Shown here: positions 8,704 through 47,484 of the stretch, piece by piece
Position numbering within the stretch: the first letter of the stretch is position 1
Layout of the letters: each line of letters opens with the position of its first letter
Virus record (IMG/VR): IMGVR_UViG_3300020477_001008
Coordinates: 1-64,000 of that record
Strand: one strand, 5' to 3'
DNA: 64,000 bases
Position numbers and translations under genes: made by a program
Notes under the pieces: model-generated
Databases searched by the model: none
Seen by the model: the letters and a program-made list of their open reading frames with translations, nothing else
Told to the model about the DNA's origin: nothing

Positions 8704-9023
8704 ATCTTTGTTTAAGCTATTTTACATCCTATTTCCAGCAATTTCCATAGTAATGATCTTTATTTTCCTATATTTCTATGCTGATGTTATGGCTTTGTAC
8801 TTTAATGATCTTTTTGCTAATTCTAGCAATAATGAGGTATGTATGGTAAGTAATCTTATATGCTAAACAAGAAAATGATAACAATGATCTTTGCATTAAC
8901 ATTGATAATGGGTTGCGTAAAGAACAATATTCCAGAACAATTTCAAGATGATAAAAACCCTAAACCAGTTATGTACGAAAGAACACAAATTTAGGTCGTA
9001 ATTAACCCTATTTTATCATATAC

Positions 9024-9031
9024 TATAAATA
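9024..9031 (+). promoter_or_regulatory. T4-type late promoter
   Basis: Perfect TATAAATA 5 nt before ATG 9037. Confidence 0.65.
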
Positions 9032-9036
9032 ATAAT

Positions 9037-9180
9037 ATGCAACAGGAAGAAAACTTAATCGAATGTGTATGTAATTGCGGTTGCGAACATCATTGCGAAG
9101 AACCTTGTACAGAGTGTTTGAAATGCGATGATTGTGATTGTCAATGTGGATGCCAATGTGGCCCAGAGGAAGACGAATAG
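9037..9180 (+). CDS. Metallothionein-like Cys-rich peptide (47 aa, 13 Cys)
   Basis: MQQEENLIECVCNCGCEHHCEEPCTECLKCDDCDCQCGCQCGPEEDE; missed by the ORF track. Confidence 0.7.
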   Translation: MQQEENLIECVCNCGCEHHCEEPCTECLKCDDCDCQCGCQCGPEEDE

Positions 9181-9222
9181 TCAATTAATGCACAATAATC
9201 AAACTAAATTAATCGGGAAAAT

Positions 9223-9471
9223 ATGAGTACAGGTAAACTAAAATGGTTTAATGCCAAAAAAGGTTACGGCTTCATTACCACTAGCGAAGGTAAAGACGTT
9301 TTCTTACATATTTCTGACCTACAAGCTTCAGGTATTGAAAGCTTACAAGAAGGCGAAGATTTGTCTTTTGATATGGGTGAGAATAGAGGTAAAGAAAAAG
9401 CTATTAACATAAAACAAGTTGGTGGAGAAGCACCAGCTGAGGCACCAGAACCTACAGAAAAATCAGAATAA
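9223..9471 (+). CDS. cspA: Cold-shock protein
   Basis: GKLKWFNAKKGYGFI (RNP1), DVFLHIS (RNP2). Confidence 0.95.
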   Translation: MSTGKLKWFNAKKGYGFITTSEGKDVFLHISDLQASGIESLQEGEDLSFDMGENRGKEKAINIKQVGGEAPAEAPEPTEKSE

Positions 9472-9564
9472 CATAACCGATTAATCTTCAGTAACTTAAT
9501 CTGTTAAAAGGCACGTTAAATCCTTGCGGCCTAGCTCTAAATAACTTATGAGCGAGGTAGAGCA

Positions 9565-9870
9565 ATGGCTAAAGCTAAAATCAATTTTAGGTCTTGGAAA
9601 GCAAGAGCACCAAAAATACCAGAATACACTTGTCCATTAATAGACGGTATATTGGACGACTTATCTGCAGACACAAACATAACAGCCAAGCAATACACAA
9701 AAGCAAAAAGAAAGCTGGAACGATTAAGAAAGCAAAATGATCGTTTAAGATCTAGTGGCATTTATTGGTACGAAAAATGCAAAAAGAACTTCAGCAGAAT
9801 AGATGAATCCGTTACAGAAGACGCAAAAAGCATATGGAATACGTTCTTTCCTTGGCTAAAAATAAAATAA
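9565..9870 (+). CDS. Hypothetical protein (PEYTCPLID motif, coiled coil)
   Basis: SD GAGG; TAAATA late-type element upstream. Confidence 0.7.
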   Translation: MAKAKINFRSWKARAPKIPEYTCPLIDGILDDLSADTNITAKQYTKAKRKLERLRKQNDRLRSSGIYWYEKCKKNFSRIDESVTEDAKSIWNTFFPWLKIK

Positions 9871-10039
9871 AATAACGGCTTTTTATTCCTGTTCATTGGT
9901 GATAATTACATATACTCGAGTGCGAGAAGTAGCGGTGCTCAGCCACTTAAAAAGGCTACATTTGGTCCGAAAGTAAGCGACGGTAACAGTTTAAAAAGGC
10001 TTATAAAAATCTTTCATTTAGTGACCGTATATAAAAAAC

Positions 10040-10107
10040 AGACTAAAACATAGTTTTTGTCTACCCCGCCAGAGCTTGATGCTCTATAAAGTGCGGGGCT
10101 TTTTTTT
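10040..10107. terminator. Back-to-back terminators
   Basis: + strand CCCCGC...GCGGGG followed by a T-run; - strand AGACAAAAAC..GTTTTAGTCT followed by GTTTTTT. Confidence 0.65.
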
Positions 10108-10109
10108 GA

Positions 10110-10313
10110 CTATTTTTTCAGAAGTTGTATTAGATAATCATCTCTAGAAATGTTGCTGTAAACAACATAGCCTCGGGCTCCATTGTAGGGATTTTGCATA
10201 TAGGTTTCATAGGTGTAGTAATGCTTGAACAAGATAAGCTCACCGGTATCTAATCGTTTGGGTAGCAGAGCAAAACGTCTGGTCCATCTGCTGTTCATAT
10301 TGTATAACCACAT
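10110..10313 (-). CDS. Hypothetical protein
   Basis: TAAATA upstream; terminator downstream. Confidence 0.6.
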   Translation of the reverse strand: MWLYNMNSRWTRRFALLPKRLDTGELILFKHYYTYETYMQNPYNGARGYVVYSNISRDDYLIQLLKK

Positions 10314-10352
10314 TGTAGTATTATTTACTGAAATTGCATAAGATCTTTATGG

Positions 10353-10380
10353 TTGACTTATAGGCAAACTCTGTTATAGT
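10353..10380 (+). promoter_or_regulatory. sigma70-type promoter
   Basis: TTGACT-N16-TATAGT with TG. Confidence 0.7.
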
Positions 10381-10411
10381 AATGATGTTTAATTAACAAT
10401 AGGAGCAAAAG

Positions 10412-10645
10412 ATGTTTAAATCATTTATAAAACATTGGACAAAGTCGCTCTTATTTGTAGCATCATTATTGATGATAGCTTACGGATCAATACAGTTAGG
10501 CGAATATATCGCAGTAGCGACCGCGAGCGAAAACGCAGATAGAGTGACATTGGCAGTTAGTATGGCGATTATAGTATTAATAGGTACTATAGGTTGGGCA
10601 TACAATGGTGCTAAATTTGATACAGAAATAGCCAAAAGAAAATAA
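10412..10645 (+). CDS. Two-TM membrane protein
   Basis: SD AGGAG; two hydrophobic helices. Confidence 0.7.
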   Translation: MFKSFIKHWTKSLLFVASLLMIAYGSIQLGEYIAVATASENADRVTLAVSMAIIVLIGTIGWAYNGAKFDTEIAKRK

Positions 10646-10716
10646 ACAAGTGGGGGCGATTGCTGTAATATTCTGTAACAAAACCATTAAATAACTTTAC
10701 CAAAGAGGTAAAGCAT

Positions 10717-10812
10717 ATGGAATTGTTTAAAGGACTAGTAGCATTTTTTATATTAGCAATAGTGATCGCCCTGCTATTGGGTTGGTATCATAGTACACTG
10801 ATTTGGATGTAA
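10717..10812 (+). CDS. Membrane microprotein (31 aa, MELFKGLVAFFILAIVIALLLGWYHSTLIWM)
   Basis: SD GAGG; hand translation. Confidence 0.5.
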   Translation: MELFKGLVAFFILAIVIALLLGWYHSTLIWM

Positions 10813-10820
10813 ATGTAAAA

Positions 10821-10868
10821 CGTTCATCTGGTATAACAGACGGAAGTAAGCACTAGCTGAAGGAACGC
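10821..10868 (+). ncRNA. Glutamine riboswitch (glnA / Downstream-peptide class)
   Basis: P1 CGTTC/GAACG, P2 TCTG/CAGA, junction CGGAAGTA, P3 AGC/GCT, GAA E-loop; 25 nt upstream of an ORF. Confidence 0.85.
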
Positions 10869-10893
10869 ACTTAACTGTAAAAAGGAGAGTGTT

Positions 10894-11067
10894 ATGAGAG
10901 ACACAAAAGGACTAGAAGCTTACACTGATAAGATCAATAAAGAAAAGAAGGCTAAGGCACTTAATAGAACACTACGTAAGAGTGTTGAAACGGGTGCAAA
11001 TGGCACACAGAACTATGTGGTCAAGAGTGGTAAGAACAAGGGTAAGATAGCTTCTAAAGGACAGTAG
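10894..11067 (+). CDS. Small basic protein under the riboswitch (57 aa, MRDTKGLEAYTDKINKEKKAKALNRTLRKSVETGANGTQNYVVKSGKNKGKIASKGQ)
   Basis: SD AAGGAG; hand translation. Confidence 0.75.
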   Translation: MRDTKGLEAYTDKINKEKKAKALNRTLRKSVETGANGTQNYVVKSGKNKGKIASKGQ

Positions 11068-11563
11068 AACTGAACATAAACAGGCTGGTTAACACACTGA
11101 AATAATGGGTGGTCAAAAGGTTAAGGTACATCTCTCTTCACCCAGAAAAAAGGTCATAAAAGTATATTCTAAGATCATAAAACCTACCGTAAGATATCTA
11201 CAGACCCAAAAAGACCATTTTTCCCACCTTTCCCATCATACCCCAAGGTTCTGATATTGCCCCGCCTTTCAGGCTATGAGCCCATAACTGATAGGGGCCA
11301 AATATTCCCACCTTTCTCTATAATGATCTATATTGGTCAGAGAGCCGATCAGCACTACGTTGCTTTCAGCACTCGTGCTGTCTAGCTTGATGCCTGACCG
11401 TAATATGCTTCCTATGTTGGTTGACTCCGGGTACTCTACAATACCGTCAACCACAACATATAGTCACAGCAGTATCAGAGAGAAAACATTTTTTGAACAC
11501 ATTTCAAACACATTTGATCTAATGGTTACTAGATATAGTGCCGTTGCAGAATGAACACACCCC

Positions 11564-11607
11564 TCACGACAGCGTTTGACCTGGGATCTAGCGTAGGGCT
11601 CGCTATT
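11564..11607. repeat. Bipartite repeat copy 1: TCACGAC-N24-AGGGCTCGCTATT
   Basis: Identical arms and exact 24-nt spacer in three copies. Confidence 0.9.
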
Positions 11608-11634
11608 AGCTTTCGCTGGCTTGGCAAGAATTGG

Positions 11635-11662
11635 TTGACAAATCTGGATAATGTGTTAATAT
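11635..11662 (+). promoter_or_regulatory. Early sigma70-type promoter
   Basis: GGTTGACA-N16-TAATAT with TG. Confidence 0.75.
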
Positions 11663-11697
11663 AGTATTAATTAACCAATATAGCCGAGGAGGGCAAT

Positions 11698-11919
11698 ATG
11701 GCAACTAAAGATACATTATACAAATTCCACGCAACAGTAACAATGCCAAGCGGAAAGCAAAGACATTTGTTTACTAACGACACAGTTAGCAGAACAAAAG
11801 TTCTTATTAAAGCTGGTGTTGATATGAGTGGTGTTAATTGGATTGCATTAGACACTCCAATGACTAAAGCTCAGGTGATAGCTTCTGGGGAACCAGCAGT
11901 TACTACTCAAGTAGCTTAA
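11698..11919 (+). CDS. Hypothetical early protein (ends -VA)
   Basis: Own promoter; SD GAGGAGG. Confidence 0.75.
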   Translation: MATKDTLYKFHATVTMPSGKQRHLFTNDTVSRTKVLIKAGVDMSGVNWIALDTPMTKAQVIASGEPAVTTQVA

Positions 11920-11924
11920 CTCGT

Positions 11925-11968
11925 TCACGACGGTTTTGGCGGGCTCTTATCGCAGAGGGCTCGCTATT
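11925..11968. repeat. Bipartite repeat copy 2
   Basis: TCACGAC-ggttttggcgggctcttatcgcag-AGGGCTCGCTATT. Confidence 0.9.
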
Positions 11969-11978
11969 AAAGATCTAA

Positions 11979-12215
11979 TTATTCTGAATAATCCGGAAGA
12001 GGGCCACCATACTTCTTACCTTTGACTGTTTTATGGCCCACAGTCTTTCTTTTACCATCTAGCTTGTGTTCACGATCCGAATCACGTCTACGCAATCCTT
12101 TTGATCTACAGCTTGATAACCAGCTGGCAGGTAGCTCTGAATCAGGCTTACCACTCTTACACACTTTGGTAGGGGCTGGTCCTATATTGTCTGTTATGAT
12201 GTCTGACACTTTCAT
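11979..12215 (-). CDS. Small basic late protein (possible internal head protein)
   Basis: Perfect TATAAATA at 12221-12228 on the - strand; MKVSDIIT N-terminus resembles T4-type capsid-targeting leaders. Confidence 0.65.
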   Translation of the reverse strand: MKVSDIITDNIGPAPTKVCKSGKPDSELPASWLSSCRSKGLRRRDSDREHKLDGKRKTVGHKTVKGKKYGGPLPDYSE

Positions 12216-12234
12216 ACAAGTATTTATAAACGGT

Positions 12235-12278
12235 TCACGACAGTAATTAGAGTTGCAAAACCAAAAGGGCTCGCTATT
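12235..12278. repeat. Bipartite repeat copy 3
   Basis: TCACGAC-agtaattagagttgcaaaaccaaa-AGGGCTCGCTATT. Confidence 0.9.
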
Positions 12279-12408
12279 GCCTTTAAGGGGTGGGGTGGTT
12301 TAAATGTACTACCTTTGTACTTTTGAACTTAAACCATTGATTCTTGGTGGTTTGGGGCCTGTTTTGTTTGTTTCAGTCTGCGTAGTCCCGGCCCCTGAGA
12401 CGAAGTTT

Positions 12409-12771
12409 CTAGTTTAGATATAATGGTCCAGTCCACTTAACAATGTAGCCTGGCACAAACACATTACCTCTAGGCTGATTGAGTGCTGGTGCATTCCAAC
12501 CTGCCGCTTTAAGGATGTCTCCTCTTTTGAAGTGTTTGAAGTCGTGCTTATTAACGAAGCCCCAAACTGATCTGCTTCCACCTCTATCGTGTCTTATGAT
12601 TTTGATGAACTTCTGTCTTGAAGAATCTTTTACTTCCCAACCATCATCAAACTCTTTAATCATATTCTCGTTTACTTCAGGTATGTCACCGTTTGCTTTG
12701 GTGTTCCATTTACGATAGTCTGCTTTAGCTTGATCTATCATTGTGTCTATTGCTTTGTATATGTCGTCCAT
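12409..12771 (-). CDS. Conserved-looking phage early protein (GDILKAAGWNAPA..RGN motif)
   Basis: SD GAGGA; own promoter at 12795-12822 (-). Confidence 0.75.
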   Translation of the reverse strand: MDDIYKAIDTMIDQAKADYRKWNTKANGDIPEVNENMIKEFDDGWEVKDSSRQKFIKIIRHDRGGSRSVWGFVNKHDFKHFKRGDILKAAGWNAPALNQPRGNVFVPGYIVKWTGPLYLN

Positions 12772-12794
12772 ATTATCCTCTCTGTTATATTATT

Positions 12795-12822
12795 AATATA
12801 CAGCAGATTGCATATTTGTCAA
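12795..12822 (-). promoter_or_regulatory. Early sigma70-type promoter (divergent)
   Basis: TTGACA-N16-TATATT on the - strand. Confidence 0.7.
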
Positions 12823-12824
12823 CC

Positions 12825-12868
12825 ACAACATATATGCCCTAACTATGGACCTCGATACTACATATAGT
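12825..12868. promoter_or_regulatory. Tandem NrdR-box-like pair (32-bp spacing)
   Basis: ACAACATATATG (12825) and ACTACATATAGT (12857) versus NrdR core aCwAtATaTwGt. Confidence 0.6.
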
Positions 12869-12894
12869 CTTTTATGTGCGTCAGCATAACACAC

Positions 12895-12922
12895 TTGCGT
12901 TTTTTAGCTTTGCTGGTATACT
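12895..12922 (+). promoter_or_regulatory. Promoter of the TC/CC-free operon (atypical -35)
   Basis: TTGCGT-N16-TATACT with TG. Confidence 0.65.
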
Positions 12923-12942
12923 AATAACAAAAAGGAGCAGTT

Positions 12943-13344
12943 ATGATATTATATACAAAACAATTTAGTAATGCAGTTAGACAAGTTATAAAGAAGCATA
13001 GAGCAAAAGTGCATACGAGATACACATTTGGCACGAGTGGGAGTTGCAGTATGTTTACTAGCGAAGGCAAAAGAAAGATTAGCTTTAACTGTATAGGAAC
13101 TAGAAAACAATTTAACTTAATAAGAAAAGATTTAGTTAAGTTGTTTGCAGGAACTTGGCAACAAAACTTTATGAAGTACAAATGGAACACGGACGGTTGG
13201 CACGATAAAAGAATGTTTAGGATAGAGGGAACTTGTTTGTTTGAGGACAAAACAAAGGAAGAGTTTGCAAAAATAATGAAACAAAGAACACACAACATAT
13301 TGTGGGGCAAGTTGGCAGGTGATACTACAGCTTGTGGAAATTAG
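12943..13344 (+). CDS. Basic, proline-free immediate-early protein
   Basis: SD AAGGAG; no Pro; Ser coded only by AGY. Confidence 0.8.
   Translation: MILYTKQFSNAVRQVIKKHRAKVHTRYTFGTSGSCSMFTSEGKRKISFNCIGTRKQFNLIRKDLVKLFAGTWQQNFMKYKWNTDGWHDKRMFRIEGTCLFEDKTKEEFAKIMKQRTHNILWGKLAGDTTACGN
13292..13335. promoter_or_regulatory. Tandem NrdR-box-like pair (32-bp spacing)
   Basis: acACAACATATTGTgg (13292) and ACTACAGCTTGT (13324), upstream of the -35 at 13349. Confidence 0.6.
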
Positions 13345-13348
13345 GGGG

Positions 13349-13376
13349 TTGACAAGTAGCAATACTATGTTAAATT
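13349..13376 (+). promoter_or_regulatory. Early promoter
   Basis: TTGACA-N16-TAAATT with TG. Confidence 0.75.
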
Positions 13377-13382
13377 AATATT

Positions 13383-13505
13383 ATGGTTAGCAAGTTAATA
13401 AAATTAATTACAAGTTATTACGCAAGTTATTATGCAAGTATTATTTTAATATTTGTAATACTAGCAATAATAGGTGCGTTGCTAACAGCTTGTACACTAA
13501 TATAG
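13383..13505 (+). CDS. Membrane microprotein, paralog A (MVSKLIKLITSYYASYYASIILIFVILAIIGALLTACTLI)
   Basis: Probably leaderless; aligns ungapped with 16123 and 23940 ORFs. Confidence 0.65.
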   Translation: MVSKLIKLITSYYASYYASIILIFVILAIIGALLTACTLI

Positions 13506-13515
13506 AGAGGACTAT

Positions 13516-14139
13516 ATGCAAAAGCAAAAGTATACAAAAGAAGAGATAGAAGCAGGCGTTAAGTTTTTACAAAACGCAAATGTAAACTTTGACTATGACA
13601 AAGACGATATGCAAATTAACTTTAGTATAGACGTTGGTTGCAGAATATGGACGGACGGTAGTAGCATATGGAGTAGGGGAGTTGTTAAAGGAGTTAAAGT
13701 TAGTAGCTTGAGTTTAACAGCAACACACAGCAAAGATATGTACGACAAAAAGGATTGGGCAAGTTTAAAGGACGAGGACTTGTACTGGAGTGGTGGACTT
13801 ACGGGTTATGCTTTTTACGATGGTAGTGGCAAAGACGGAACGTGGTACGATGGCGTTGACGACGAAAGTGCATTAATTAATAGGAACACTAGTAAACATA
13901 GCGACGGCTTAATTTACACGGACGACGGCTTTGTTAAAAATTTAATAAAGTACTTAAGAGACGAGTGTAGCTTTGATACTAGCTTTACAGACTTAACAAA
14001 GTTTTTGGACTTTAGCTATAGCGAACAAGGGATGCAGGATATGGAAACTGTAAACTTTGACGTGGAAATGGACGGGGACTTTTGGATTAAGTGTAATGAC
14101 GAGCTAGTTAAGTTTTTACATAACAAAAAAGTAGCTTAA
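13516..14139 (+). CDS. Acidic, proline-free immediate-early protein (207 aa, ends -VA)
   Basis: SD GAGAGG; no Pro. Confidence 0.85.
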   Translation: MQKQKYTKEEIEAGVKFLQNANVNFDYDKDDMQINFSIDVGCRIWTDGSSIWSRGVVKGVKVSSLSLTATHSKDMYDKKDWASLKDEDLYWSGGLTGYAFYDGSGKDGTWYDGVDDESALINRNTSKHSDGLIYTDDGFVKNLIKYLRDECSFDTSFTDLTKFLDFSYSEQGMQDMETVNFDVEMDGDFWIKCNDELVKFLHNKKVA

Positions 14140-29479: not shown

Positions 29480-30661
29480 CTATCTGATTTTAATGATATT
29501 CATTAGCTCTGATAACTCAGGAAACGTTTTATCAAATGACTCTACTCTTACTAAATCCATTCTGTATATGTGCCTCTTAAACTCACCTATTTTATTACTA
29601 CTATCGCTGTTTTCCATAAATTGAATTACTTGGTTGAATCCTTTATAATTATAGTCTAAAAGCCTATCTTTTACAACCTCTTTTAAGAAGCTTGGTAATG
29701 TAGAGATGTTATAATGCTTGGGTTCGTGTAATGTATTTAGGTATACTTTCATACCAAAATTATCAGTCCAGTCTATGAATTCAGGCAAGTAAAAAGCATT
29801 AAAAATATTAACAGTATGACATATAGATAAATCTAGCTTATTTGATTCATATGTTTGCCACACTTCTAAATTCTTCAGTACTTGCTCCCATTTAGCTGGG
29901 TGTCTTTGGTATTCAAATTGTTTACCTATACCATCGATACTAAAATGCACATCAACATATTTGAAATGCGGAAATATATTATCAAGAGCATCTAATGGCA
30001 ATTGTGTTCCATTTGTGTTATAGTGTAAGCTGATTTTATGTGCGTGTCCTTGTTTTATAATCTTATGTAAAAGATCCAAATGTTCTTTTATCATAAACGG
30101 TTCACCACCTGTAAAATCCAAATGCTCTAGTACAGGAATTAGTGATTCAACATTTTTCCAAAACACTTCTGATTTTTCTGGCCAATCAAGTCTTTCATAA
30201 AACTTAATATCTTTATCAATTATATCATATTTTCTTTGTTCTGAAATCCATTTAGATGAGTATTGTGGAGAACAAATTCTGCATTTAAGATTACATATAT
30301 TTCCAAGTTTTAAATCCAAATATCTAGGAGCAGATTCTTCCCATATGATTTTATCATTAATTAAATGCTTGTATTTTGCATTATCTCTTACTCTTTTAGA
30401 TGCTTTACCCGACATTTCTTCCATCCAACATCTATGGCATCCACGTGGTTGTGTGCCAGATAAAAACCTTTTACGTATAGTAGCTAGTTCTTCACTATTC
30501 CATATTTCTTGGAATTCTTCACGTTGGATTTTATATTCTTGACCATTTTCCTTTTTTAGTGTATCTTTATACATACAGCACGGTTTTACTGTGCCGTTAG
30601 GTTGGACTTCTAAACCAGTCCAAGGAAGAATACAAAAATTTTGAGGTAATTTATTATCCAT
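29480..30661 (-). CDS. Radical SAM/SPASM-Twitch protein
   Basis: CNLKCRIC, GGEP, FCILPW..PCC..CHRC. Confidence 0.9.
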   Translation of the reverse strand: MDNKLPQNFCILPWTGLEVQPNGTVKPCCMYKDTLKKENGQEYKIQREEFQEIWNSEELATIRKRFLSGTQPRGCHRCWMEEMSGKASKRVRDNAKYKHLINDKIIWEESAPRYLDLKLGNICNLKCRICSPQYSSKWISEQRKYDIIDKDIKFYERLDWPEKSEVFWKNVESLIPVLEHLDFTGGEPFMIKEHLDLLHKIIKQGHAHKISLHYNTNGTQLPLDALDNIFPHFKYVDVHFSIDGIGKQFEYQRHPAKWEQVLKNLEVWQTYESNKLDLSICHTVNIFNAFYLPEFIDWTDNFGMKVYLNTLHEPKHYNISTLPSFLKEVVKDRLLDYNYKGFNQVIQFMENSDSSNKIGEFKRHIYRMDLVRVESFDKTFPELSELMNIIKIR

Positions 30662-31405
30662 ATGTTAAATGTCGCTTTTATCGGTTGTAGTTGGACGCAA
30701 GGTTACAATATTCCATATACTAGTACTTATCCGTATATTGTACACGAATTGTTAAACAAATACAAGGTTGAAAACAGAGTAGTTAATGCTGGAAGAAATG
30801 GTTCCAGTTGGGTTACATATCCAAGTACTATAAAATATATTAACGAAACGTATGATGCTGATATATTTGTAGTTCAGCATACAACACCGGACAGAGGTTT
30901 ATTGCAGTTTTCATCTAGCCAGTGGAAGTACCAAAAAATAGCTAGAGATCACGATGTGTATGAAAACTATTTGCAGTTATGGGATAACACACAAAGTTAT
31001 TATCATTTAACAATAGGAATGGCTGAACAAATAATTGCTGATGAAAAATCAGAATTAGTACAACATATTTTTCACGAAATACAACGCAAGAGTACATTAA
31101 CAAAACAACAAATAATTGATAGAGTTTCTTATTGGTATAATCAAGAAAGACATCATCCTCTTAACTTTGAAAAATATACAGAAGCAGTTGAGTATTGTAA
31201 TTATTATATTAAAGATAAAAACAAAAAAATTGTAAATTTATTTTGGTTAGATGATGAGTTTTGTAAATCATTTACAAATCTACCCAATAAAATAGTTGTA
31301 CAAAACGAAATAGATTTTAAACAATATGCAATTGATTCTGGATATCACTTTGATGATAAAGGAAATAAAATATTAGCTGAGGTACTAATACCCCAGCTTT
31401 TATAG
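30662..31405 (+). CDS. SGNH/GDSL-like protein
   Basis: GCSWT, NAGRNG, DSGYH. Confidence 0.7.
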   Translation: MLNVAFIGCSWTQGYNIPYTSTYPYIVHELLNKYKVENRVVNAGRNGSSWVTYPSTIKYINETYDADIFVVQHTTPDRGLLQFSSSQWKYQKIARDHDVYENYLQLWDNTQSYYHLTIGMAEQIIADEKSELVQHIFHEIQRKSTLTKQQIIDRVSYWYNQERHHPLNFEKYTEAVEYCNYYIKDKNKKIVNLFWLDDEFCKSFTNLPNKIVVQNEIDFKQYAIDSGYHFDDKGNKILAEVLIPQLL

Positions 31406-31558
31406 GATTATTTTTTAGCTTTCTTTTTAGGTTTACTCTCAACTTTTTTTGGAGGTTTACCAACTAAAAATTCTGTTAGTGCTTCTAAGTCTTTTATAAC
31501 TTTGTCGATAAATTTGGCCATATTAATCTCCTTGTTAATTGTTTAATAGTATATATGA

Positions 31559-31756
31559 TTATGATTTGTCTTTAGGAACTTTGACCCAACGGTCAACTTC
31601 TGTACCTTTTCTATTAGTATACTCTACTCTTAGAAACTGTGTACCTTTTGGTGCCGAGCCTGCCACAGATTTAAATATTTTTTTAAAGCCTAAGCCTTCT
31701 TTTTCTTGTGTAAACTCTTTATCATCGGTTATTTTAATTTTTATCTTTCTACCCAT
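31559..31756 (-). CDS. Small basic protein (start MGRKIK)
   Basis: ORF track, start adjusted. Confidence 0.6.
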   Translation of the reverse strand: MGRKIKIKITDDKEFTQEKEGLGFKKIFKSVAGSAPKGTQFLRVEYTNRKGTEVDRWVKVPKDKS

Positions 31757-31848
31757 AACTTTACTTATCCACAAAAATTTCGGGGGTACTAACACCCCAG
31801 GTGGTGGCGTTTCGGGTACTGTAGGGGTCTTAAAACAAATCTTTTTTT

Positions 31849-33072
31849 CTATGATTTAGCTATTTTTTCAAGATCTAGCAATTCTGGAAATATATCACGC
31901 CAATTTTCATTTCTTATATTATCTAAACGATTTGTGATTTCATACCAGTCTTTTATTAAGTGAGAGTAGTCAGCTTCATACAAATAACTTATTAGCGATT
32001 CATATCTTGTATGATTAGCATCTGTATTTTCTTTCATCCACGTTTGAGCATTAGTCCATTTCTCTGCAAGTTTATCTTTCATATCTTTTGGTAGTATTTG
32101 TATTCTCAAATGCTCAGGAGTTTGCAAAGGATTTAATAAACTATGTGGACCAACCCATTCCTTTTTAATCCAATCAATATGAAAATCTGAAACGTGAAAA
32201 CTATTAAACACGTCAACACACGACGCAACAAAAAAGAAAGCCCTAGGACATTTTTCAAAAACATTTTTTCTATTTTCTTCAACTTGCTCCCAGCTTTGCC
32301 CAGCACGAAGATATTCACCTCGCTTATGTGTTGCATCTAAACTAGCACCAATTTCTACATATTCAAACTTGTCCCATTCTTTGAATACGTCCATTCCTTT
32401 ATAAATTACTTGGCTAAAGTTTGTATTGTACTTTAGTCTTACGTGAAACATTTTCTTTTCTACTAATTTTTTTAATATTCTATAATGCTCTTCCATTATT
32501 AATGGTTCACCACCGGCAAAATATACTTCTTCTAAACCATCTACATATGGCTCAACTACTTCCCAAAATCTTTTTTCGTCTTTGTATGGTCTAATAACTT
32601 TAGAGTGATCTGGTTTACTGAATAATTTAGTTTGGTCTTCATACCAGCTTGATGATAAATCTGGACCACAAGTTCTACATTTAAAGTTACATAAGTTACT
32701 AAATCTAAAATCAATGTAAGGTAAATTAACTTTGTCAACAGTACCATCTTCTTTAGTTGATTCTACAACATCCCAATGATGATTTAATTTTTCATTAGAC
32801 CAAGTTCTAGTTGTATTAATACTATGTCTTTCTTGTTCGTAACAACGTGTACAGATCTTATTAGCTTTTCCATTTAGTAAGTCTTTACGTAATTGTTTTT
32901 GTTGCGGAGAATTCCAAGCTTGTTCTAATGTTATTTCTTTTAAGTTACCCATTATATCGTTACTATCACTCATACAACAAGTCAATACTCTACCATCTGG
33001 CCACGTGTGTAAATGTGTCCACGGTATCATACAAAAAGTTTTTGATTTAAGTAACTTATCTTTATCTAGCAT
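31849..33072 (-). CDS. Radical SAM/SPASM-Twitch protein
   Basis: CNFKCRTC, GGEP, FCMIPW..CC..CTRC. Confidence 0.9.
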   Translation of the reverse strand: MLDKDKLLKSKTFCMIPWTHLHTWPDGRVLTCCMSDSNDIMGNLKEITLEQAWNSPQQKQLRKDLLNGKANKICTRCYEQERHSINTTRTWSNEKLNHHWDVVESTKEDGTVDKVNLPYIDFRFSNLCNFKCRTCGPDLSSSWYEDQTKLFSKPDHSKVIRPYKDEKRFWEVVEPYVDGLEEVYFAGGEPLIMEEHYRILKKLVEKKMFHVRLKYNTNFSQVIYKGMDVFKEWDKFEYVEIGASLDATHKRGEYLRAGQSWEQVEENRKNVFEKCPRAFFFVASCVDVFNSFHVSDFHIDWIKKEWVGPHSLLNPLQTPEHLRIQILPKDMKDKLAEKWTNAQTWMKENTDANHTRYESLISYLYEADYSHLIKDWYEITNRLDNIRNENWRDIFPELLDLEKIAKS

Positions 33073-34072
33073 TGATTTCGCTTTTCCAACTTGGAATAAG
33101 CAGATTTTCAAACACACTTCTGTTATGAGAAAGTTTTGCTTTTATATCATCTTGTTGATATAATTCTGTCCATTCCTCAGGTGTTTTATGTACAAGAGTT
33201 TCTATCTCGTTCCACATAGCACTATATCTTTCATTGTAAGGTAAACTATCAAATGCTTCGTGGTTATATAATTCTGTGTAAGGTTCAAAGCCATTATCTA
33301 TTAAGAACTTCATTGTATCCTTACAACCGTGAACGATAAAAATTTTATTGTACAAAATTGGTTTCCAAGTTTTTTCTGTTATAAACAAACTAGTATCACT
33401 AACAATACTTTCATTTACTATTTCAAATCCCGCATAGTGATAATTTGGAGGTAATATTTCTTGATTTTGTCCTTCGTCAATTTCTTTACCTGTAAAATCT
33501 AATTTAAGATCATCTCCTTGAAATTTTGGATTAGTAAAATAATGATCAGGCACATTATTACCATATCTATTAATCCAAGATATCTCGCCAAATCCATCTA
33601 ATCCATTATCAAACAAATCAGTGACTAATTTTGCTCTATGTGTTTTTGCCGCTCCATTTAAACAAATAAATCTTCTAGTTTTTCTTTCATATGCTTTGGG
33701 TTGTTTAATACTTTTATTTTGTTTGTTTATTATTGTTCTGGATAGTAATTCAAAAGGTGCTGACACTATGTTTACAGGAAAATCTTTACGTTCAGTTCCT
33801 GCAAACCATTTATCTACATTTTCTTTTAGATTAACATCAGCCATTACTAAACTAGCATTATCTTCAGGCCAACCTTCTAAAGCTTCACGTACATACGGTA
33901 AAAAATTTTCTTTTGTTTGGAAATGTATTTCACCTTCCCACACTCTTTTAATTACAATATGATGTGTTTCTTTTTTATCTTGATTATTACGAATCCAATA
34001 ATTTAGGGCATTAAGTTGTCCTAAAATATCGTGTGTACAATCTAAATCAACTATGTGAAGTTCTTTATTCAT
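33062..34072 (-). CDS. Glycosyltransferase-like protein (E..F.TEK..KP family)
   Basis: FICLNG...HR, NES..FITEKTWKPI, GF. Confidence 0.6.
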   Translation of the reverse strand: MNKELHIVDLDCTHDILGQLNALNYWIRNNQDKKETHHIVIKRVWEGEIHFQTKENFLPYVREALEGWPEDNASLVMADVNLKENVDKWFAGTERKDFPVNIVSAPFELLSRTIINKQNKSIKQPKAYERKTRRFICLNGAAKTHRAKLVTDLFDNGLDGFGEISWINRYGNNVPDHYFTNPKFQGDDLKLDFTGKEIDEGQNQEILPPNYHYAGFEIVNESIVSDTSLFITEKTWKPILYNKIFIVHGCKDTMKFLIDNGFEPYTELYNHEAFDSLPYNERYSAMWNEIETLVHKTPEEWTELYQQDDIKAKLSHNRSVFENLLIPSWKSEINAR

Positions 34073-41791: not shown

Positions 41792-42140
41792 CCCAATACA
41801 TCTTATTCATTTTTTGATACTCATATTCTTTTTTTAAATTTCTCATTTCTTGTTCTGTTACTCTATGATGAAATGTCATACCATTAATTGTTATACTAAT
41901 TCTTACGTAAGGATTAGGTGCACGGTGTGGCCTAGGTCCTCGCTCTTTATATTGTACGTACCAGTGTGTACCATCTCTATCAATACCAACTCCGGGTTTC
42001 CAATGGTCTAATATATTTTCAAAATCTTCTACAAGCAATTTATATCCATTTGTTAATTCTTCGTTAACAAGGATTGATATGTCAACTGTTTGTGTATTTT
42101 TCAACAAATATATTTTTATTTTTTTACTAAATTTTGTCAT
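41784..42140 (-). CDS. Hypothetical protein
   Basis: Overlaps both neighbours. Confidence 0.65.
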   Translation of the reverse strand: MTKFSKKIKIYLLKNTQTVDISILVNEELTNGYKLLVEDFENILDHWKPGVGIDRDGTHWYVQYKERGPRPHRAPNPYVRISITINGMTFHHRVTEQEMRNLKKEYEYQKMNKMYWDE

Positions 42141-43659
42141 TACTATCTACGTATTCTTGGCTTCCTGGATTAGCACCTTGTGGTTTTACTATCCAGCCTT
42201 CTTTTTTAGCTCTTTCTTCTAATTCTTTTTTATGCATTGATCCTTTTGTAGCATCGCCATCGAACAAACCAACTGGCTTGATAACAGTTTCAGGTATACT
42301 AACAAACCATTTTTGTAACTCTTTATGAGTAAATGTTTCAATAAAATTTTTATTTCTTCTAGTATCATATTGCGTATAAAAAGTTTTAAAGTCTCTATGT
42401 CTTGTTACTTCACTTGATGTATATGCGTGACCTGTTTTAATTACTCTTGTATACTCTATTAATCTTTTAATACCATCAATTTCCATATCGTGAACAAGTG
42501 GATTATCTTTGTTATCAGCTATCCATTTTTCTAATGCATCAGCTCTTTCATTTCTAATATGTGTTGGTAATGTTACAATACTTTGAAAACTTGGAAATCT
42601 TAATATATTAAAACTCATTGTAGGAAAATGTTTTCCATATTGTTCTTTTAAGTTAACCATCTCGTCCATAAACTCAGGTAATGAAAATAAACATAAAGCA
42701 TTAATAGTCATCATCATATGAAACTCACGTACATTACCTTCTTGTAAAAACTTGTGAATATTTCCTATCCACGTATCCCATAATAAACCATCTCTAATAT
42801 ATTCTGCTTGTTTTCCAAATGATTCATTGGATGTATACAAATCAAAATATTTAAAAGAGTGTGTTGCATCAACTAATCTTTGCATTAGCTCCGGTTTAGC
42901 TCCTAGGTTAGTATTAACAGCAAATCTAACATTACAATCTGGATTATTATTCCACCAATCAATTAATCTCCAAAAGTCTTGCGACATAGTTGCTTCACCG
43001 CCTGTTACTCTTAATTCTTCTAATGTATCTTTTAATTCATCTTCCCACCATTTAAAAAAAGCATCTATATAAGGATTGCCTTCATTTCTCTTTCCATATT
43101 TCATTGCCCACGAGCCGTCTTGCTGAAATGCTCTAGCACCATCACTAACTAAATTTTGATATGCTCCATTTTTCTTAATATCGTTTTGCCATTGTGTTGA
43201 AAAACTAGCATTACAATATGAACAAGAAAAATTACAGTTGGCATCAAAGGCAATTTCTAATGTTTTTAAAGGAACATCTTCTGTATAACTATATTTTGTT
43301 TTTGCTTCTTCTAATGCTTTTTCTTTATAGATAACTGATTTATATGTTCTATCTGATACATAATTTTTACCTAAGTCTTCAACTTTCCAACAGTATTCAC
43401 ACTCTTTAGGTCTTTCACCATCGAGCATTTGTTTACGCACCATCTTTTTATATTTGGTATTGTGAATAGCTTTAAAGTTTTTTTGTACTTCTTCTAAAGG
43501 AATTTTATGTGCTGGTGGGTGGTGGCAACTTGCAGTAGATCCTGAGTTCAACCATATAGTAGAGTTGTACCATTTAGCACCACAGAAGCTTGGGGATATT
43601 TTATCAATAACTCTATCCCGCCACTCTTGATAAGATTCGTTTGGCTTTTTATCTATCAT
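42127..43659 (-). CDS. Radical SAM/Twitch protein
   Basis: CNFSCSYC, GGE, FCGAKW..SCHH..CEYCW. Confidence 0.9.
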   Translation of the reverse strand: MIDKKPNESYQEWRDRVIDKISPSFCGAKWYNSTIWLNSGSTASCHHPPAHKIPLEEVQKNFKAIHNTKYKKMVRKQMLDGERPKECEYCWKVEDLGKNYVSDRTYKSVIYKEKALEEAKTKYSYTEDVPLKTLEIAFDANCNFSCSYCNASFSTQWQNDIKKNGAYQNLVSDGARAFQQDGSWAMKYGKRNEGNPYIDAFFKWWEDELKDTLEELRVTGGEATMSQDFWRLIDWWNNNPDCNVRFAVNTNLGAKPELMQRLVDATHSFKYFDLYTSNESFGKQAEYIRDGLLWDTWIGNIHKFLQEGNVREFHMMMTINALCLFSLPEFMDEMVNLKEQYGKHFPTMSFNILRFPSFQSIVTLPTHIRNERADALEKWIADNKDNPLVHDMEIDGIKRLIEYTRVIKTGHAYTSSEVTRHRDFKTFYTQYDTRRNKNFIETFTHKELQKWFVSIPETVIKPVGLFDGDATKGSMHKKELEERAKKEGWIVKPQGANPGSQEYVDSNDKI

Positions 43660-46098: not shown

Positions 46099-47484
46099 TC
46101 ATAAGCAACTTTCATAAAATTCTTCCAATTCCGGAAAAACTTTTTTAAATGATTTGTTCCTTCTTTTATCATATTCATTAATATATCTTACAAAATCATT
46201 TCTAGTTATATTTAAGTTAATTTGCTCAGCTTCGTTTGGATCTGCTTCTGCATATGACTTAAAACGCATTAATTTAGCTAGTTCAAAATCAAAAAACCCT
46301 TTATATGGGTTGTTATGTGTTTCAGCATTATTCTCCATAACTGCCACAGCAGGATCTAATAATGATCCATATTTTTTAGGTAATATTGAAGCACTCAAAT
46401 AAGCAGGGTGCCTTAAAATTGCTGTGTCTATTGTTATTGGTACTTTTCTATCATTGCTATAAAATTCTGTTTTTAATGGATGTATTATATCAAGTAACTT
46501 ATGCAACCTTGGCATACTTAATAATCCAGTTGTACACATAATTGTAATTTTTGTTTTTGGTAATTCAGTTAGCACACGACACATATTATCATACCATTGA
46601 TTAAAGTCTAACCCATCTCTAATATACTCTGCTTGTTCGCCAAATGTATCAACTGATGTGTATAGTCTTGTTAAACCAATTTTATTATCTAATGTTATAC
46701 GTTTCATTTTTTCAATGTATTGATCAAACAGTTTATCTGGTACGCAACCATTTGAGTTAATGCTTAATTCTAATTCTGGTCTTGGATTGTTATTAACATA
46801 ATCTAATACTTTAAAAGTATCTTTTGCTAATAGAGGTTCCCCGCCTGTAATTCTAAAAACCTGGAGAGTTTTGTACAGGTCGGGAAACCATTTCCAAAAA
46901 GCGTCAACATAAGGATTATGTTCACGATGCGGAATCGGTAATTTGCCTTGTTGTTTTAGCCAAGACAAGTTATTAAATTTATCGCTTGTAGGATATGCAC
47001 CTTCAGATTGTATTTCTTCCATCCAGGAACTACTGAATGCAGGACTACAATATGCACATTTTAAATTACAAACATTTGAAAAACTAACTTCAACATAAGT
47101 TGGATTAACATTTTCTACGCCAACCATTTTAGCAGTTTCTTCTAAATATGGTTTAGCCCACGGCTCGTGTGATTTAGAACTTCTATCGCTATAATGTTCT
47201 GGACCTAGATCTTCTACGTTCCAACAGTATTGACATTCAGGAGGTCGTACTCCTTTTAACATTAATTCTCTTTGTGATTTTTTATATTCAGTATTGTGTA
47301 AAGCACTAGGATTAGTTTTTAATTCTTCTACAGGAACTTGGTGTGTTCTAGGGTGATGACAACTATGTGTATGACCATATTGTAAATGAATAGTTGACTG
47401 ATACCATTTCGCTAGACAGAATGATGGCGATACAGCATTAAGCTGATCTCTTGTCTGCTTGATTTTAATAACTTCATCTGTCAT
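46099..47484 (-). CDS. Radical SAM/Twitch protein (paralog of 42127)
   Basis: CNLKCAYC, GGEP, FCLAKW..SCHH..CQYCW. Confidence 0.9.
   Translation of the reverse strand: MTDEVIKIKQTRDQLNAVSPSFCLAKWYQSTIHLQYGHTHSCHHPRTHQVPVEELKTNPSALHNTEYKKSQRELMLKGVRPPECQYCWNVEDLGPEHYSDRSSKSHEPWAKPYLEETAKMVGVENVNPTYVEVSFSNVCNLKCAYCSPAFSSSWMEEIQSEGAYPTSDKFNNLSWLKQQGKLPIPHREHNPYVDAFWKWFPDLYKTLQVFRITGGEPLLAKDTFKVLDYVNNNPRPELELSINSNGCVPDKLFDQYIEKMKRITLDNKIGLTRLYTSVDTFGEQAEYIRDGLDFNQWYDNMCRVLTELPKTKITIMCTTGLLSMPRLHKLLDIIHPLKTEFYSNDRKVPITIDTAILRHPAYLSASILPKKYGSLLDPAVAVMENNAETHNNPYKGFFDFELAKLMRFKSYAEADPNEAEQINLNITRNDFVRYINEYDKRRNKSFKKVFPELEEFYESCL

What the first reader, a model, noticed from the sequence alone, without database searches (positions are those of the whole stretch)
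10821..11067. Phage-borne glutamine riboswitch controlling an uncharacterised 57-aa protein
Seen: a complete three-way-junction aptamer, then GCACT...AGTGT pairing that can bracket the AAGGAG SD, and a basic ORF with a VETGANGTQ motif. Established: glnA/Downstream-peptide riboswitches sense L-glutamine and in cyanobacteria control small proteins such as glutamine synthetase inactivating factors. Inference: the phage reads host nitrogen status through a small regulator, in a phage that otherwise looks non-cyanobacterial.
Basis: partly seen in the sequence, partly recalled or inferred. Interest (0 to 1): 0.7.

Follow-up and report, generated by a model that had tools for sequence, protein, structure and literature searches.

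The report
Glutamine riboswitch gating a phage mini-protein
A genuine glutamine-sensing RNA switch sits in front of a conserved 57-residue basic protein in a large marine phage that is not a cyanophage; the same switch turns out to be a widespread cassette in front of several small basic proteins in phages of streamlined marine bacteria, but what those proteins do is still unknown.

Summary
Window 10819-10871 (+) matches Rfam RF01739 (type-1 glutamine riboswitch) over the full model at 61.4 bits (gathering score 35). It is the only copy in the 242,646-bp virus record.

Next come a hairpin that sequesters the Shine-Dalgarno (SD) site (10868-10872 with 10887-10891), the SD AAGGAG (10882-10887) and a 57-aa ORF (10894-11067). 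All 11 syntenic relatives keep the aptamer 22 nt before the ORF. The 55-nt leader differs at 1-2 positions; the ORF differs at 25-41 of 174. The hairpin covaries across viral contigs (CACUU/GAGUG against CACCU/GGGUG).

This matches the ON-switch model proposed for Synechocystis gifB. Glutamine captures the C after P1, melts the helix and allows translation.

The protein belongs to phrog_32989, a virus-only family found in 26 Pelagibacter phage records. It has no DUF4278/IF17 signature. Its model is one long helix plus a small beta-hairpin.

The phage is a 32% GC jumbo myovirus. Its terminase is closest to PA5oct-like phages. It carries an alpha-type tmRNA and no psbA.

Glutamine riboswitches in non-cyanophages were already reported (Melnitz, Mosig). 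The link to small-ORF families appears undescribed. Effector function is unresolved.

The parts
10810..10815 (+). TAAATG, a 5-of-6 match to the TAAATA motif that precedes most phage copies of this riboswitch. It may be a T4-type late-promoter core.
   Evidence: TAAATA lies 11-16 nt upstream of P1 in 157 of 208 unique viral upstream sequences, against 6 of 208 in a control window. In the window, TAAATG starts 11 nt before C10821. The promoter reading rests on my own knowledge of the T4 late consensus TATAAATA and was not tested.
10819..10871 (+). Type-1 glutamine riboswitch aptamer (Rfam RF01739). P1 is 10821-10825 with 10863-10867, P1a is 10827-10830 with 10837-10840, and P2 is 10849-10851 with 10856-10858. 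The conserved cores CGUUCA, ACGGAAGUA and GAAGGAACGCA are all present.
   Evidence: 61.4 bits against a gathering score of 35, full model. In a 43-sequence alignment all P1a and P2 pairs covary, and 97.9% of cells are paired against 83.0% in shuffles.
10868..10891 (+). Expression-platform hairpin. CACUU (10868-10872) pairs with GAGUG (10887-10891), enclosing the SD. C10868 is the conserved C after P1 (model position 50), the counterpart of the linchpin C60/C68 in the published structures.
   Evidence: RNAfold MFE and centroid; -8.2 kcal/mol. The helix is 100% paired in 43 sequences, and its fourth pair is C-G in 23, U-A in 18 and U-G in 2. In 152 unique platforms the fourth pair is C-G 61, U-A 51, U-G 7 and never C-A. 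Own-partner matches number 117 of 152 against 81.2 +/- 3.3 for shuffled partners.
10882..10887 (+). Shine-Dalgarno sequence AAGGAG, 6 nt upstream of the start codon. Its last G (10887) lies in the platform helix, and A10883-G10884 pair with C10875-U10876 in the MFE fold.
   Evidence: Sequence; fold.
10894..11067 (+). ORF for a 57-aa basic protein (pI 10.25) of family phrog_32989, called family C in this report. The predicted fold is a long N-terminal helix (residues 2-30) plus a small beta-hairpin carrying the conserved E-V-x-x-G-x-x-G-T-x-x-Y-x-x-K-x-G-x-N motif.
   Evidence: ORF list. phrog_32989 at E 1.8e-16. 28 phage records, 26 of them Pelagibacter phages. 164 metagenomic homologues. 338 representative clusters at 50% identity, nearly all 44-134 aa. 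Alignment A1. AlphaFold2 model with pLDDT 75.9.

Best explanation
Window 10819-11067 is a complete cis-regulatory module: a type-1 glutamine riboswitch that controls translation of a small basic phage protein. Shown here are the aptamer, its covarying helices, a covarying 5-bp helix that ties the nucleotides right after P1 (C10868-U10872) to the 3' end of the SD and the spacer (G10887-G10891), and a conserved 57-aa coding sequence starting 22 nt after the aptamer. The mechanism is inferred by homology with the Synechocystis gifB riboswitch (Klahn 2018, Ren 2015). Without glutamine the helix holds the ribosome-binding region closed. When L-glutamine binds, the conserved C after P1 is drawn into a long-range pair inside the aptamer, the helix melts and the ORF is translated (an ON switch). 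The module lies in a marine jumbo myovirus of at least 243 kb and 32% GC that is not cyanophage-like and probably infects a streamlined, low-GC marine heterotroph (a SAR11- or SAR116-like alphaproteobacterium is the best guess). The same aptamer and platform is a mobile leader cassette in marine viral contigs. It sits in front of at least three unrelated families of small basic proteins of 30-65 aa, mostly behind a T4-late-promoter-like TAAATA motif. The phage therefore most likely makes this protein, probably late in infection, only when host glutamine is high, meaning nitrogen is sufficient. The protein's target is not known. My ranking is: a nucleic-acid-, ribosome- or virion-associated late protein, then a lysis or late-cycle timing factor, then an inhibitor of host nitrogen assimilation such as glutamine synthetase.
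For: Aptamer: RF01739 at 61.4 bits, full length. Conservation: all 11 syntenic relatives (ORF 72-84% identical) carry RF01739 ending 22 nt before the ATG. The 55-nt leader differs at 1-2 positions while the ORF differs at 25-41 of 174 nt. Platform: MFE and centroid hairpin and compensatory change U-A to C-G with no C-A combination. Published model for the same arrangement: PMC6212724. Coding: phrog_32989, 164 and 338 homologue sets, and riboswitch-free homologues in cultured pelagiphages, so the ORF is a real gene in its own right. Cassette: the exact platform string occurs in 94 viral contigs. At least 120 further contigs were found for each of two looser patterns. Downstream ORFs cluster into family C (78 loci, including the window), B-like families (89 and 28 loci) and family A (80 loci). 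The window's 38-nt 3' aptamer plus platform string is identical in 20 loci where it precedes family A instead. Cultured phages: in Mosig the riboswitch directly precedes the annotated 51-aa CDS Mosig_00116. In Melnitz it precedes an unannotated 32-aa ORF. Late expression hint: TAAATA upstream in 157 of 208 sequences, and family C sits inside a baseplate gene cluster in L195. Genome and host.
Against: No binding or expression measurement exists for this RNA. The ON direction is transferred from one cyanobacterial example. Three of the five platform pairs are invariant, and the covarying pair separates two large sequence groups, so the number of independent compensatory events is small. Sequences were also collected with patterns that fixed the CAC at the start of the 5' strand. 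The TAAATA match in the window is 5 of 6, and the promoters of this phage group are unknown. RNA-library contigs covering relatives of the module do not prove transcription. The host is not identified. The protein has no informative homologue or fold match.
Confidence: 0.75

Rival explanations
1. The 57-aa protein is a functional analogue of the cyanobacterial glutamine synthetase inactivating factors IF7/IF17. High glutamine would switch on a small basic protein that plugs host GS, so the phage would throttle host nitrogen assimilation.
For: The regulatory logic is the same as gifB (glutamine ON switch, small basic product; PMC6212724). All riboswitch-linked phage ORF families have pI of about 10-11. 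Cells of the SAR116 order carry tandem glutamine riboswitches in front of 38-40-aa basic ORFs as well as amt, and a related single-cell genome carries one in front of gltB. This places the peptides in a nitrogen regulon.
Against: No DUF4278 match and no YRG repeats in families A, B or C. Cells of the SAR116 order that carry the peptide module have both GS and the adenylyltransferase GlnE, so they do not lack conventional GS control. The OM43 host of Melnitz is reported to lack glnA altogether, yet Melnitz carries a riboswitch-peptide module (PMC9004378). Family C is found only in viruses. In T4-like contigs it sits among baseplate genes.
Confidence: 0.1
2. The aptamer is a decaying relic or a chance look-alike, and the ORF is expressed constitutively.
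For: Many homologues of the protein have no riboswitch. These include five cultured pelagiphage genomes and the P0012 contigs at 74% identity.
Against: The match is full length and 26 bits above the gathering score. The leader is far better conserved than the coding sequence in relatives. The helices covary. An identical platform is maintained in about 100 contigs.
Confidence: 0.04
3. The riboswitch regulates the phage tmRNA (ssrA) rather than a protein, as proposed for phage Melnitz.
For: In Melnitz the aptamer lies immediately 3' of the permuted tmRNA and falls inside the annotated SsrA feature (PMC9004378).
Against: In this genome the only riboswitch is at 10.8 kb and the tmRNA is at 172.2 kb. 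In Melnitz itself the aptamer is downstream of the tmRNA and is followed by the same SD-sequestering platform and a 32-aa ORF. In Mosig it precedes an annotated CDS.
Confidence: 0.02
4. The host is a cyanobacterium after all, and the module is an ordinary cyanophage glutamine riboswitch.
For: The class was defined in cyanobacteria and occurs in T4-like cyanophages. Four of the seven cellular hits to the aptamer-plus-platform pattern were cyanobacterial MAGs. Only about 55% of the genome is held.
Against: No psbA in 243 kb. TerL and tail sheath are nearest to jumbo phages of Proteobacteria, not to the hundreds of cyanophage records in the same search. The tmRNA is alpha-type at 152.8 bits. The protein family's isolate homologues are 26 Pelagibacter phage records and no cyanophage. 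The cyanobacterial hits carry different downstream ORFs (DUF4278-like or hydrophobic peptides).
Confidence: 0.05

Closest known systems
Type-1 glutamine riboswitch of Synechocystis gifB (IF17 leader), Klahn et al. 2018 (PMC6212724); structure by Ren et al. 2015
   Same: Same Rfam family (RF01739) and same three-helix aptamer. The conserved C after P1 and the following nucleotides pair with the ribosome-binding region. It controls translation of a small basic protein. The proposed direction (glutamine switches it ON) is transferred from this system.
   Different: The product here has no DUF4278/IF17 signature and is virus-only. The carrier is a jumbo phage of a probable heterotroph. No NtcA context is known. 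Nothing has been measured.
Glutamine riboswitches of OM43 phage Melnitz, Pelagibacter phage Mosig and related pelagimyophage contigs, Buchholz et al. 2022 (PMC9004378)
   Same: Non-cyanophage marine phages carrying RF01739. Melnitz shares the platform GCACUUAAC...GGAGAGUGUUAUG (83% identity over 59 nt). Both also carry alpha-type permuted tmRNAs.
   Different: Those are ~141-kb T4-like Kyanoviridae, whereas this is a PA5oct-like jumbo phage. The paper assigns the switch to ssrA control. Here it is 161 kb from the tmRNA and plainly leads a small ORF. The downstream ORFs differ: family B in Melnitz, family A in Mosig, family C here.
Downstream-peptide / glutamine-II riboswitch (RF01704) with IF17-like mini-ORFs such as yfr6 in Prochlorococcus and marine Synechococcus
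   Same: A glutamine aptamer directly in front of very short conserved ORFs (17-100 codons), in many copies, in nitrogen-poor oceans.
   Different: It has a different aptamer architecture (pseudoknot instead of P1). No RF01704 hit was found here even at E<=1. Those peptides carry DUF4278-like YRG motifs, which family C lacks.
Glutamine riboswitches in T4-like cyanophages (mentioned in PMC9602691 and PMC9964418)
   Same: A phage-borne RF01739.
   Different: Cyanobacterial hosts. In my sample the YRG-repeat (DUF4278-like) ORFs form a separate cluster from the window's family.
Cellular glnA-motif leaders in marine heterotrophs. The metagenomic associations of Weinberg et al. 2010 (PMC2864571) are here traced to genomes of the SAR116 order.
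   Same: Same aptamer. A SAR116-labelled single-cell genome has the same GCACUUAAC...AGUG platform upstream of gltB. Fifteen of 151 genomes of that order carry the motif, usually in tandem, upstream of amt or of 38-40-aa basic ORFs related to phage family B.
   Different: Those are cellular genes, mostly tandem aptamers, and the amt leaders use another platform. Family C was not seen downstream of any cellular copy.

Membership tests
Glutamine riboswitch, type 1 (glnA RNA motif, Rfam RF01739) | Covariance-model score at or above the curated gathering score over the full model | tested here: met
   61.4 bits against 35, model positions 1-53 of 53, E 3.9e-11; confirmed.
Glutamine riboswitch, type 1 (glnA RNA motif, Rfam RF01739) | Three-helix junction (P1, P1a, P2) supported by compensatory changes, with invariant core strands CGUUCA, CGG(A/G)AGUA and GAAGGAACGC | tested here: met
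   In alignment A2 (43 sequences) all 4 P1a pairs and all 3 P2 pairs change on both sides. P1 and the core strands are invariant. 97.9% of cells are paired against 83.0% in shuffles, with 0 of 500 shuffles reaching the observed value.
Glutamine riboswitch, type 1 (glnA RNA motif, Rfam RF01739) | Position in the 5' leader of a gene on the same strand, with an expression platform in which the C after P1 and following bases pair with the ribosome-binding region | tested here: met
   The aptamer ends 22 nt before the ATG at 10894. The helix 10868-10872 with 10887-10891 overlaps the SD. Covariation is shown. The model comes from PMC6212724.
Glutamine riboswitch, type 1 (glnA RNA motif, Rfam RF01739) | Selective binding of L-glutamine and glutamine-dependent change in expression | not testable with these tools
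   Needs in-line probing or ITC, plus reporter assays.
Glutamine-II riboswitch (Downstream-peptide motif, RF01704) | Covariance-model match | tested here: not met
   An E-value-mode scan of 10640-11720 lists only RF01739.
GS inactivating factors IF17/IF7 (DUF4278-containing, gifB/gifA) | Pfam DUF4278 match or YRG-type repeats | tested here: not met
   No DUF4278 hit at E<=0.1 for the window protein, nor at E<=10 for it and representatives of families A and B. YRG-repeat ORFs cluster separately.
GS inactivating factors IF17/IF7 (DUF4278-containing, gifB/gifA) | Physical binding to and inhibition of glutamine synthetase | tested here: inconclusive
   Co-folding with two copies of a SAR116-order GS gave a score of 0.00 and the verdict 'no answer'. 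This is not evidence either way, and the true host GS is unknown.
PHROG phrog_32989 (pelagiphage small protein of unknown function) | Profile HMM match over the full length | tested here: met
   E 1.8e-16, protein residues 1-53 on profile positions 1-53 of 54. tblastn finds 45-63% identity to 26 Pelagibacter phage records.

The most novel reading that the evidence does not exclude
The window is one instance of an undescribed, ocean-wide regulon. A portable glutamine-riboswitch leader cassette is recombined, at the start codon, in front of several unrelated families of 30-65-aa basic proteins in phages of streamlined heterotrophs (SAR11, OM43, probably SAR116) and in some of their host cells. 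These mini-proteins would be effectors that couple the late infection programme to the host's nitrogen state, through virion completion, lysis timing or shut-down of host nitrogen assimilation. That would make them non-cyanobacterial counterparts of the IF7/IF17 system.
Probability: 0.3. Interest if true: 0.8.

Novelty: new member of a known kind. Interest (0 to 1): 0.55.

Why it matters
Riboswitches in phages are rare. A metabolite sensor wired directly to a phage gene shows which host signal the virus considers worth reading.

Here the signal is glutamine, the central read-out of nitrogen status. The setting is the nitrogen-poor surface ocean and its most abundant heterotrophs. The data move the class out of cyanobacteria and cyanophages. 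They correct the published idea that such phage switches control tmRNA. They also expose hundreds of small, unannotated or 'hypothetical' basic ORFs as the real cargo.

Cultured systems exist: Mosig and other pelagiphages on HTCC1062, and Melnitz on OM43. The question of what a phage does differently when nitrogen is plentiful therefore becomes directly testable.

The carrier is also of interest. It is a jumbo phage of at least 243 kb with the base composition and gene sharing of SAR11-type virus-host systems.

Tried and rejected
- **DNA search against isolate phages.** Megablast of 9000-14000 found nothing.
- **Riboswitch next to pelagiphage homologues.** Six loci at E<=1 and five whole pelagiphage genomes had no RF01739. 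The pairing is therefore not a general property of the protein family.
- **Function from sequence.** Pfam gave only sub-threshold noise (CFTR_R at E 0.067). The PDB profile search hit only designer beta-propeller 'Cake' proteins through a repeated 15-residue hairpin motif worth about 2 bits per repeat. The protein atlas gave virus-only unnamed clusters. The exhaustive profile search found 338 clusters, nearly all 44-134 aa. Two long proteins matched only through many repeats of the hairpin motif.
- **Function from structure.** The AlphaFold2 model (pLDDT 75.9) is a helix plus a hairpin. The best Foldseek PDB match had E 6.8, so nothing usable.
- **GS binding.** Co-folding of the protein with two copies of a SAR116-order GS returned 'no answer' with score 0.00. 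I do not count this for or against binding.
- **Missing covalent GS control as an argument for IF-like inhibitors.** Rejected, because the five SAR116-order genomes tested all have GlnE and GS.
- **Host from tmRNA similarity.** Only short matches to Melnitz, which are uninformative.
- **Riboswitch distribution in Alphaproteobacteria.** Two of 151 sampled genomes have it. Genomes reached this way are unnamed, so I could not say whether SAR11 cells carry it.
- **Transcription evidence.** Contigs from RNA libraries cover the aptamer and ORF of relatives. DNA carry-over cannot be excluded, and no 5' ends were resolved.
- **Sigma-70 promoter and terminator scan.** No convincing promoter directly upstream, and no terminator between aptamer and ORF.
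- **Structure in the 630-nt ORF-less region downstream.** RNAalifold gave an unfavourable covariation term with 5 sequences, and there was no Rfam hit at E<=1.

Full report
**Observation**

The region was read directly and scanned with all Rfam models. The window has one gathering-level hit. It is RF01739, the type-1 glutamine riboswitch, at 10819-10871 on the + strand. It scores 61.4 bits against a threshold of 35 and covers the full model. The same single hit is the only one in the whole 242,646-bp virus record that contains the window. An E-value-mode rescan of 10640-11720 finds nothing else, in particular no glutamine-II motif.

P1 is CGUUC (10821-10825) with GAACG (10863-10867). P1a is 10827-10830 with 10837-10840, and P2 is 10849-10851 with 10856-10858. 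Twenty-two nucleotides after the aptamer, a 57-codon ORF starts at ATG 10894 and ends at 11067. It is preceded by AAGGAG at 10882-10887.

**Expression platform**

RNAfold places 10867-10872 against 10887-10892 in both the MFE and the centroid structure. The isolated hairpin folds at -8.2 kcal/mol. The 5' strand begins with C10868, which is the conserved C at model position 50, directly after P1.

Klahn et al. 2018 build on the Ren et al. 2015 structures and describe exactly this arrangement for Synechocystis gifB. The C after P1 and its neighbours pair with the ribosome-binding site. Glutamine binding recruits that C into a long-range pair and melts the inhibitory helix, which gives an ON switch (PMC6212724).

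To test the helix I collected phage copies with patterns that constrain only the aptamer and the first bases of the 5' strand.
- Among 152 unique platforms, the fourth pair is C-G in 61, U-A in 51, U-G in 7 and never C-A.
- 117 platforms have a perfect 5-bp partner within 14 nt of the AUG. Shuffled partners give 81.2 +/- 3.3, with a maximum of 93 in 2000 shuffles.
- On a 43-sequence MAFFT alignment the helix is 100% paired, with C-G 23, U-A 18 and U-G 2 at the variable pair. All P1a and P2 pairs covary as well.

There are caveats. Three of the five platform pairs never vary. The two variants mark two large groups, so the number of independent events is small.

**Close relatives**

Proteins 84% and 72% identical to the ORF (P0009, P0011) lie on metagenomic contigs syntenic with the window. 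The shared genes include the cold-shock gene, a 77-aa gene, a 76-aa gene and a DUF7717 gene. All 11 loci examined carry RF01739 ending 22 nt before the ATG.

From the GACGG core to the ATG, the leader differs at 1-2 of 55 positions. The ORF differs at 25-41 of 174 positions, with both synonymous and non-synonymous changes. A 74%-identical homologue in another genomic context (P0012) has no aptamer. The switch is therefore under stronger constraint than the gene it precedes, and it can be gained or lost over short evolutionary distances.

**The protein**

The product has a pI of 10.25 and contains 12 Lys. It matches phrog_32989, a family of unknown function, end to end at E 1.8e-16. tblastn finds it in 28 isolate-phage records, and 26 of these are Pelagibacter phages: podoviruses, a siphovirus and the myovirus HTVC008M.

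There are 164 metagenomic homologues and 338 clusters at 50% identity in an exhaustive profile search. Almost all are 44-134 aa long. Atlas neighbours are 100% viral. Invariant positions are R2, G37, T38 and G46. E30, V31, Y41, K44 and N48 are nearly invariant.

AlphaFold2 (pLDDT 75.9) predicts a helix over residues 2-30 followed by a small beta-hairpin. Pfam, PDB sequence profiles and Foldseek give nothing informative. The protein is not a recognisable IF17/IF7 relative.

**A wider cassette**

The window's aptamer 3' end plus platform, taken as an exact pattern, occurs in 94 IMG/VR contigs. Downstream ORFs cluster as follows:
- Family C, 57-65 aa, 78 loci, containing the window protein. tblastn of a 65-aa member against the genome hits 10897-11049 at E 1e-8.
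- Two B-like groups, 27-51 aa, with 89 and 28 loci.
- Family A, about 50 aa, 80 loci.
- A mixed group that includes YRG-repeat, DUF4278-like ORFs.

All are strongly basic. The window's 38-nt string is identical in 20 loci where it is joined to family A instead of family C. The leader therefore behaves as a module exchanged at the start codon.

TAAATA lies 11-16 nt upstream of P1 in 157 of 208 unique upstream sequences, against 6 of 208 in a control window. The window has TAAATG at that position. From my own knowledge this resembles the T4-type late promoter. Consistent with that, family C lies inside a baseplate gene cluster in L195, and between a head-completion/DNA-end-protector region and baseplate genes in HTVC008M.

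**Cultured phages**

In Pelagibacter phage Mosig, RF01739 (50 bits) sits directly in front of the annotated 51-aa CDS Mosig_00116, a family A member. There the platform strand CUCUUU pairs with AAAGGAG.

In OM43 phage Melnitz the aptamer (52.8 bits) lies just 3' of the permuted tmRNA. It is followed by the same platform as in the window and by an unannotated 32-aa family B ORF. Buchholz et al. 2022 reported these riboswitches and interpreted the Melnitz one as controlling ssrA (PMC9004378). In the present genome the tmRNA lies 161 kb away. The data fit control of the small ORF better.

**Cells**

A pattern scan of one genome per prokaryotic species found seven hits. Four are cyanobacterial MAGs with DUF4278-like or hydrophobic peptides downstream. 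One is a SAR116-labelled single-cell genome (29% GC) in which the same GCACUUAAC...AGUG platform precedes gltB.

In that genome's order, 15 of 151 genomes carry RF01739, mostly as tandem pairs. These lie upstream of an ammonium transporter or of 38-40-aa basic ORFs resembling phage family B. In a class-wide sample only 2 of 151 genomes carry it. This gives names to part of the 'marine metagenome' associations of Weinberg et al. 2010.

**The phage and its host**

The record is 242,646 bp and 32% GC. It carries nine tRNAs and a permuted tmRNA that scores 152.8 bits on the alphaproteobacterial model. CheckV estimates 55% completeness.

PHROG hits identify T4-like baseplate, sheath, portal and terminase genes. 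TerL is 53.6% identical to PA5oct-like Pseudomonas jumbo phages and 52.7% to the 469-kb Sinorhizobium phage Phosso. The tail sheath is about 40% identical to PA5oct. No psbA and no GS gene are present in the held sequence.

Several observations point the same way:
- low GC content;
- the alpha-type tmRNA;
- a small-protein family shared with SAR11 phages;
- a platform shared with a SAR116 cell and with Melnitz/Mosig-type phages.

Together these point to a streamlined marine heterotroph, most likely an alphaproteobacterium. The host is not established.

**What the protein does**

- There is no DUF4278 signature.
- The SAR116-order cells that carry peptide modules possess GlnE as well as GS.
- The Melnitz host is reported to lack glnA.
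- Co-folding with a SAR116-order GS gave no answer.

I keep this idea at about 10%. Other options are equally open. One is a late-gene, virion- or nucleic-acid-associated role, suggested by basic composition, late-promoter-like motifs and structural-gene neighbourhoods. Another is a role in timing the end of infection. In HTVC023P, family A lies two genes upstream of an M15 peptidase. In podoviruses, family C lies just upstream of the maturase genes.

**Verdict**

Relative to the literature it is a new member of a known class: phage-borne and non-cyanophage examples were already published. There is an added, apparently undescribed observation. The switch is a portable leader for several families of small basic phage proteins, and this jumbo phage uses it for a phrog_32989 protein. 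Ligand binding, the direction of regulation, the host and the effector function all remain to be shown experimentally.

Noticed in passing
window 11068-11697: A ~630-nt stretch without a conserved ORF follows the 57-aa gene. It is 81% identical on average across relatives, about as conserved as the ORF. It includes an invariant 37-nt block (about 11107-11143), a GCCCCGCC...GGGGC hairpin and a direct repeat AACACATTT. It ends in a good sigma-70-like promoter (TTGACA-16-TAATAT at 11635-11662) for the next gene. The 49-aa ORF at 11105-11254 is cut by a stop in relative L144, so it is probably not coding. There is no Rfam hit, and RNAalifold gives no covariation support with 5 sequences.
   Followed up: partly
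window 9037-9180 (+), with 1541-2764, 29480-33117, 42127-43659 and 46099-47484: A 47-aa ORF with 15 cysteines lies just upstream of the cold-shock gene. A 44-47-aa gene is called at the same place in relatives. The window also holds at least five radical-SAM-like proteins by PHROG matches. This could be a peptide-modification system or a metal-binding peptide.
   Followed up: no
window 57689-64000 (-), continuing to G000 69874: A giant ORF of 4061 aa runs off the window. It is followed by a 1158-aa baseplate-wedge-like protein (phrog_10646) and other T4-like structural genes.
   Followed up: partly
L144-L154 (for example L144 2587-2757) against window 10646-10818: Syntenic relatives carry one to three tRNA genes between the 77-aa membrane-protein gene and the riboswitch. 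In the same interval the window instead has a 31-aa hydrophobic ORF (10717-10812).
   Followed up: no
L008 (Melnitz MZ577097.1) 1484-1653: The Melnitz glutamine riboswitch lies downstream of the permuted tmRNA and partly inside the annotated SsrA feature. It is followed by an SD-sequestering platform and an unannotated 32-aa ORF. A 33-aa CDS is annotated on the opposite strand instead. The published 'riboswitch controls ssrA' reading looks doubtful.
   Followed up: yes
L125-L137 (genomes of the order of the SAR116-labelled SAG); L121: Tandem glutamine aptamers about 60 nt apart precede either an ammonium transporter (with a different platform, GCGGAUC...) or 38-40-aa basic ORFs (MTYRQYQWK...) related to phage family B. 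A single aptamer precedes gltB in the SAG. The genomes tested also encode GS and GlnE.
   Followed up: partly
L381 (G161, an unnamed alphaproteobacterial genome of 1.6 Mb; locus GC 29%): A single RF01739 copy (59.7 bits) lies upstream of an ORF of at least 452 aa that I did not identify. It has yet another platform sequence.
   Followed up: no
G000 172221-172515 (L109 7221-7515): The jumbo phage encodes a permuted two-piece tmRNA of alphaproteobacterial type (RF01849 at 152.8 bits; tag ADENLALAA by ARAGORN), 161 kb from the riboswitch.
   Followed up: partly
L160, L164, L168 and similar viral loci: A further riboswitch-linked family of 26-33-aa peptides (for example MKTKNNWQLVLIKQQKEKEQRK...) uses a different platform, GCACCAAUACC...AAGGAGCA. 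There the strand after P1 appears to pair with the SD itself.
   Followed up: no
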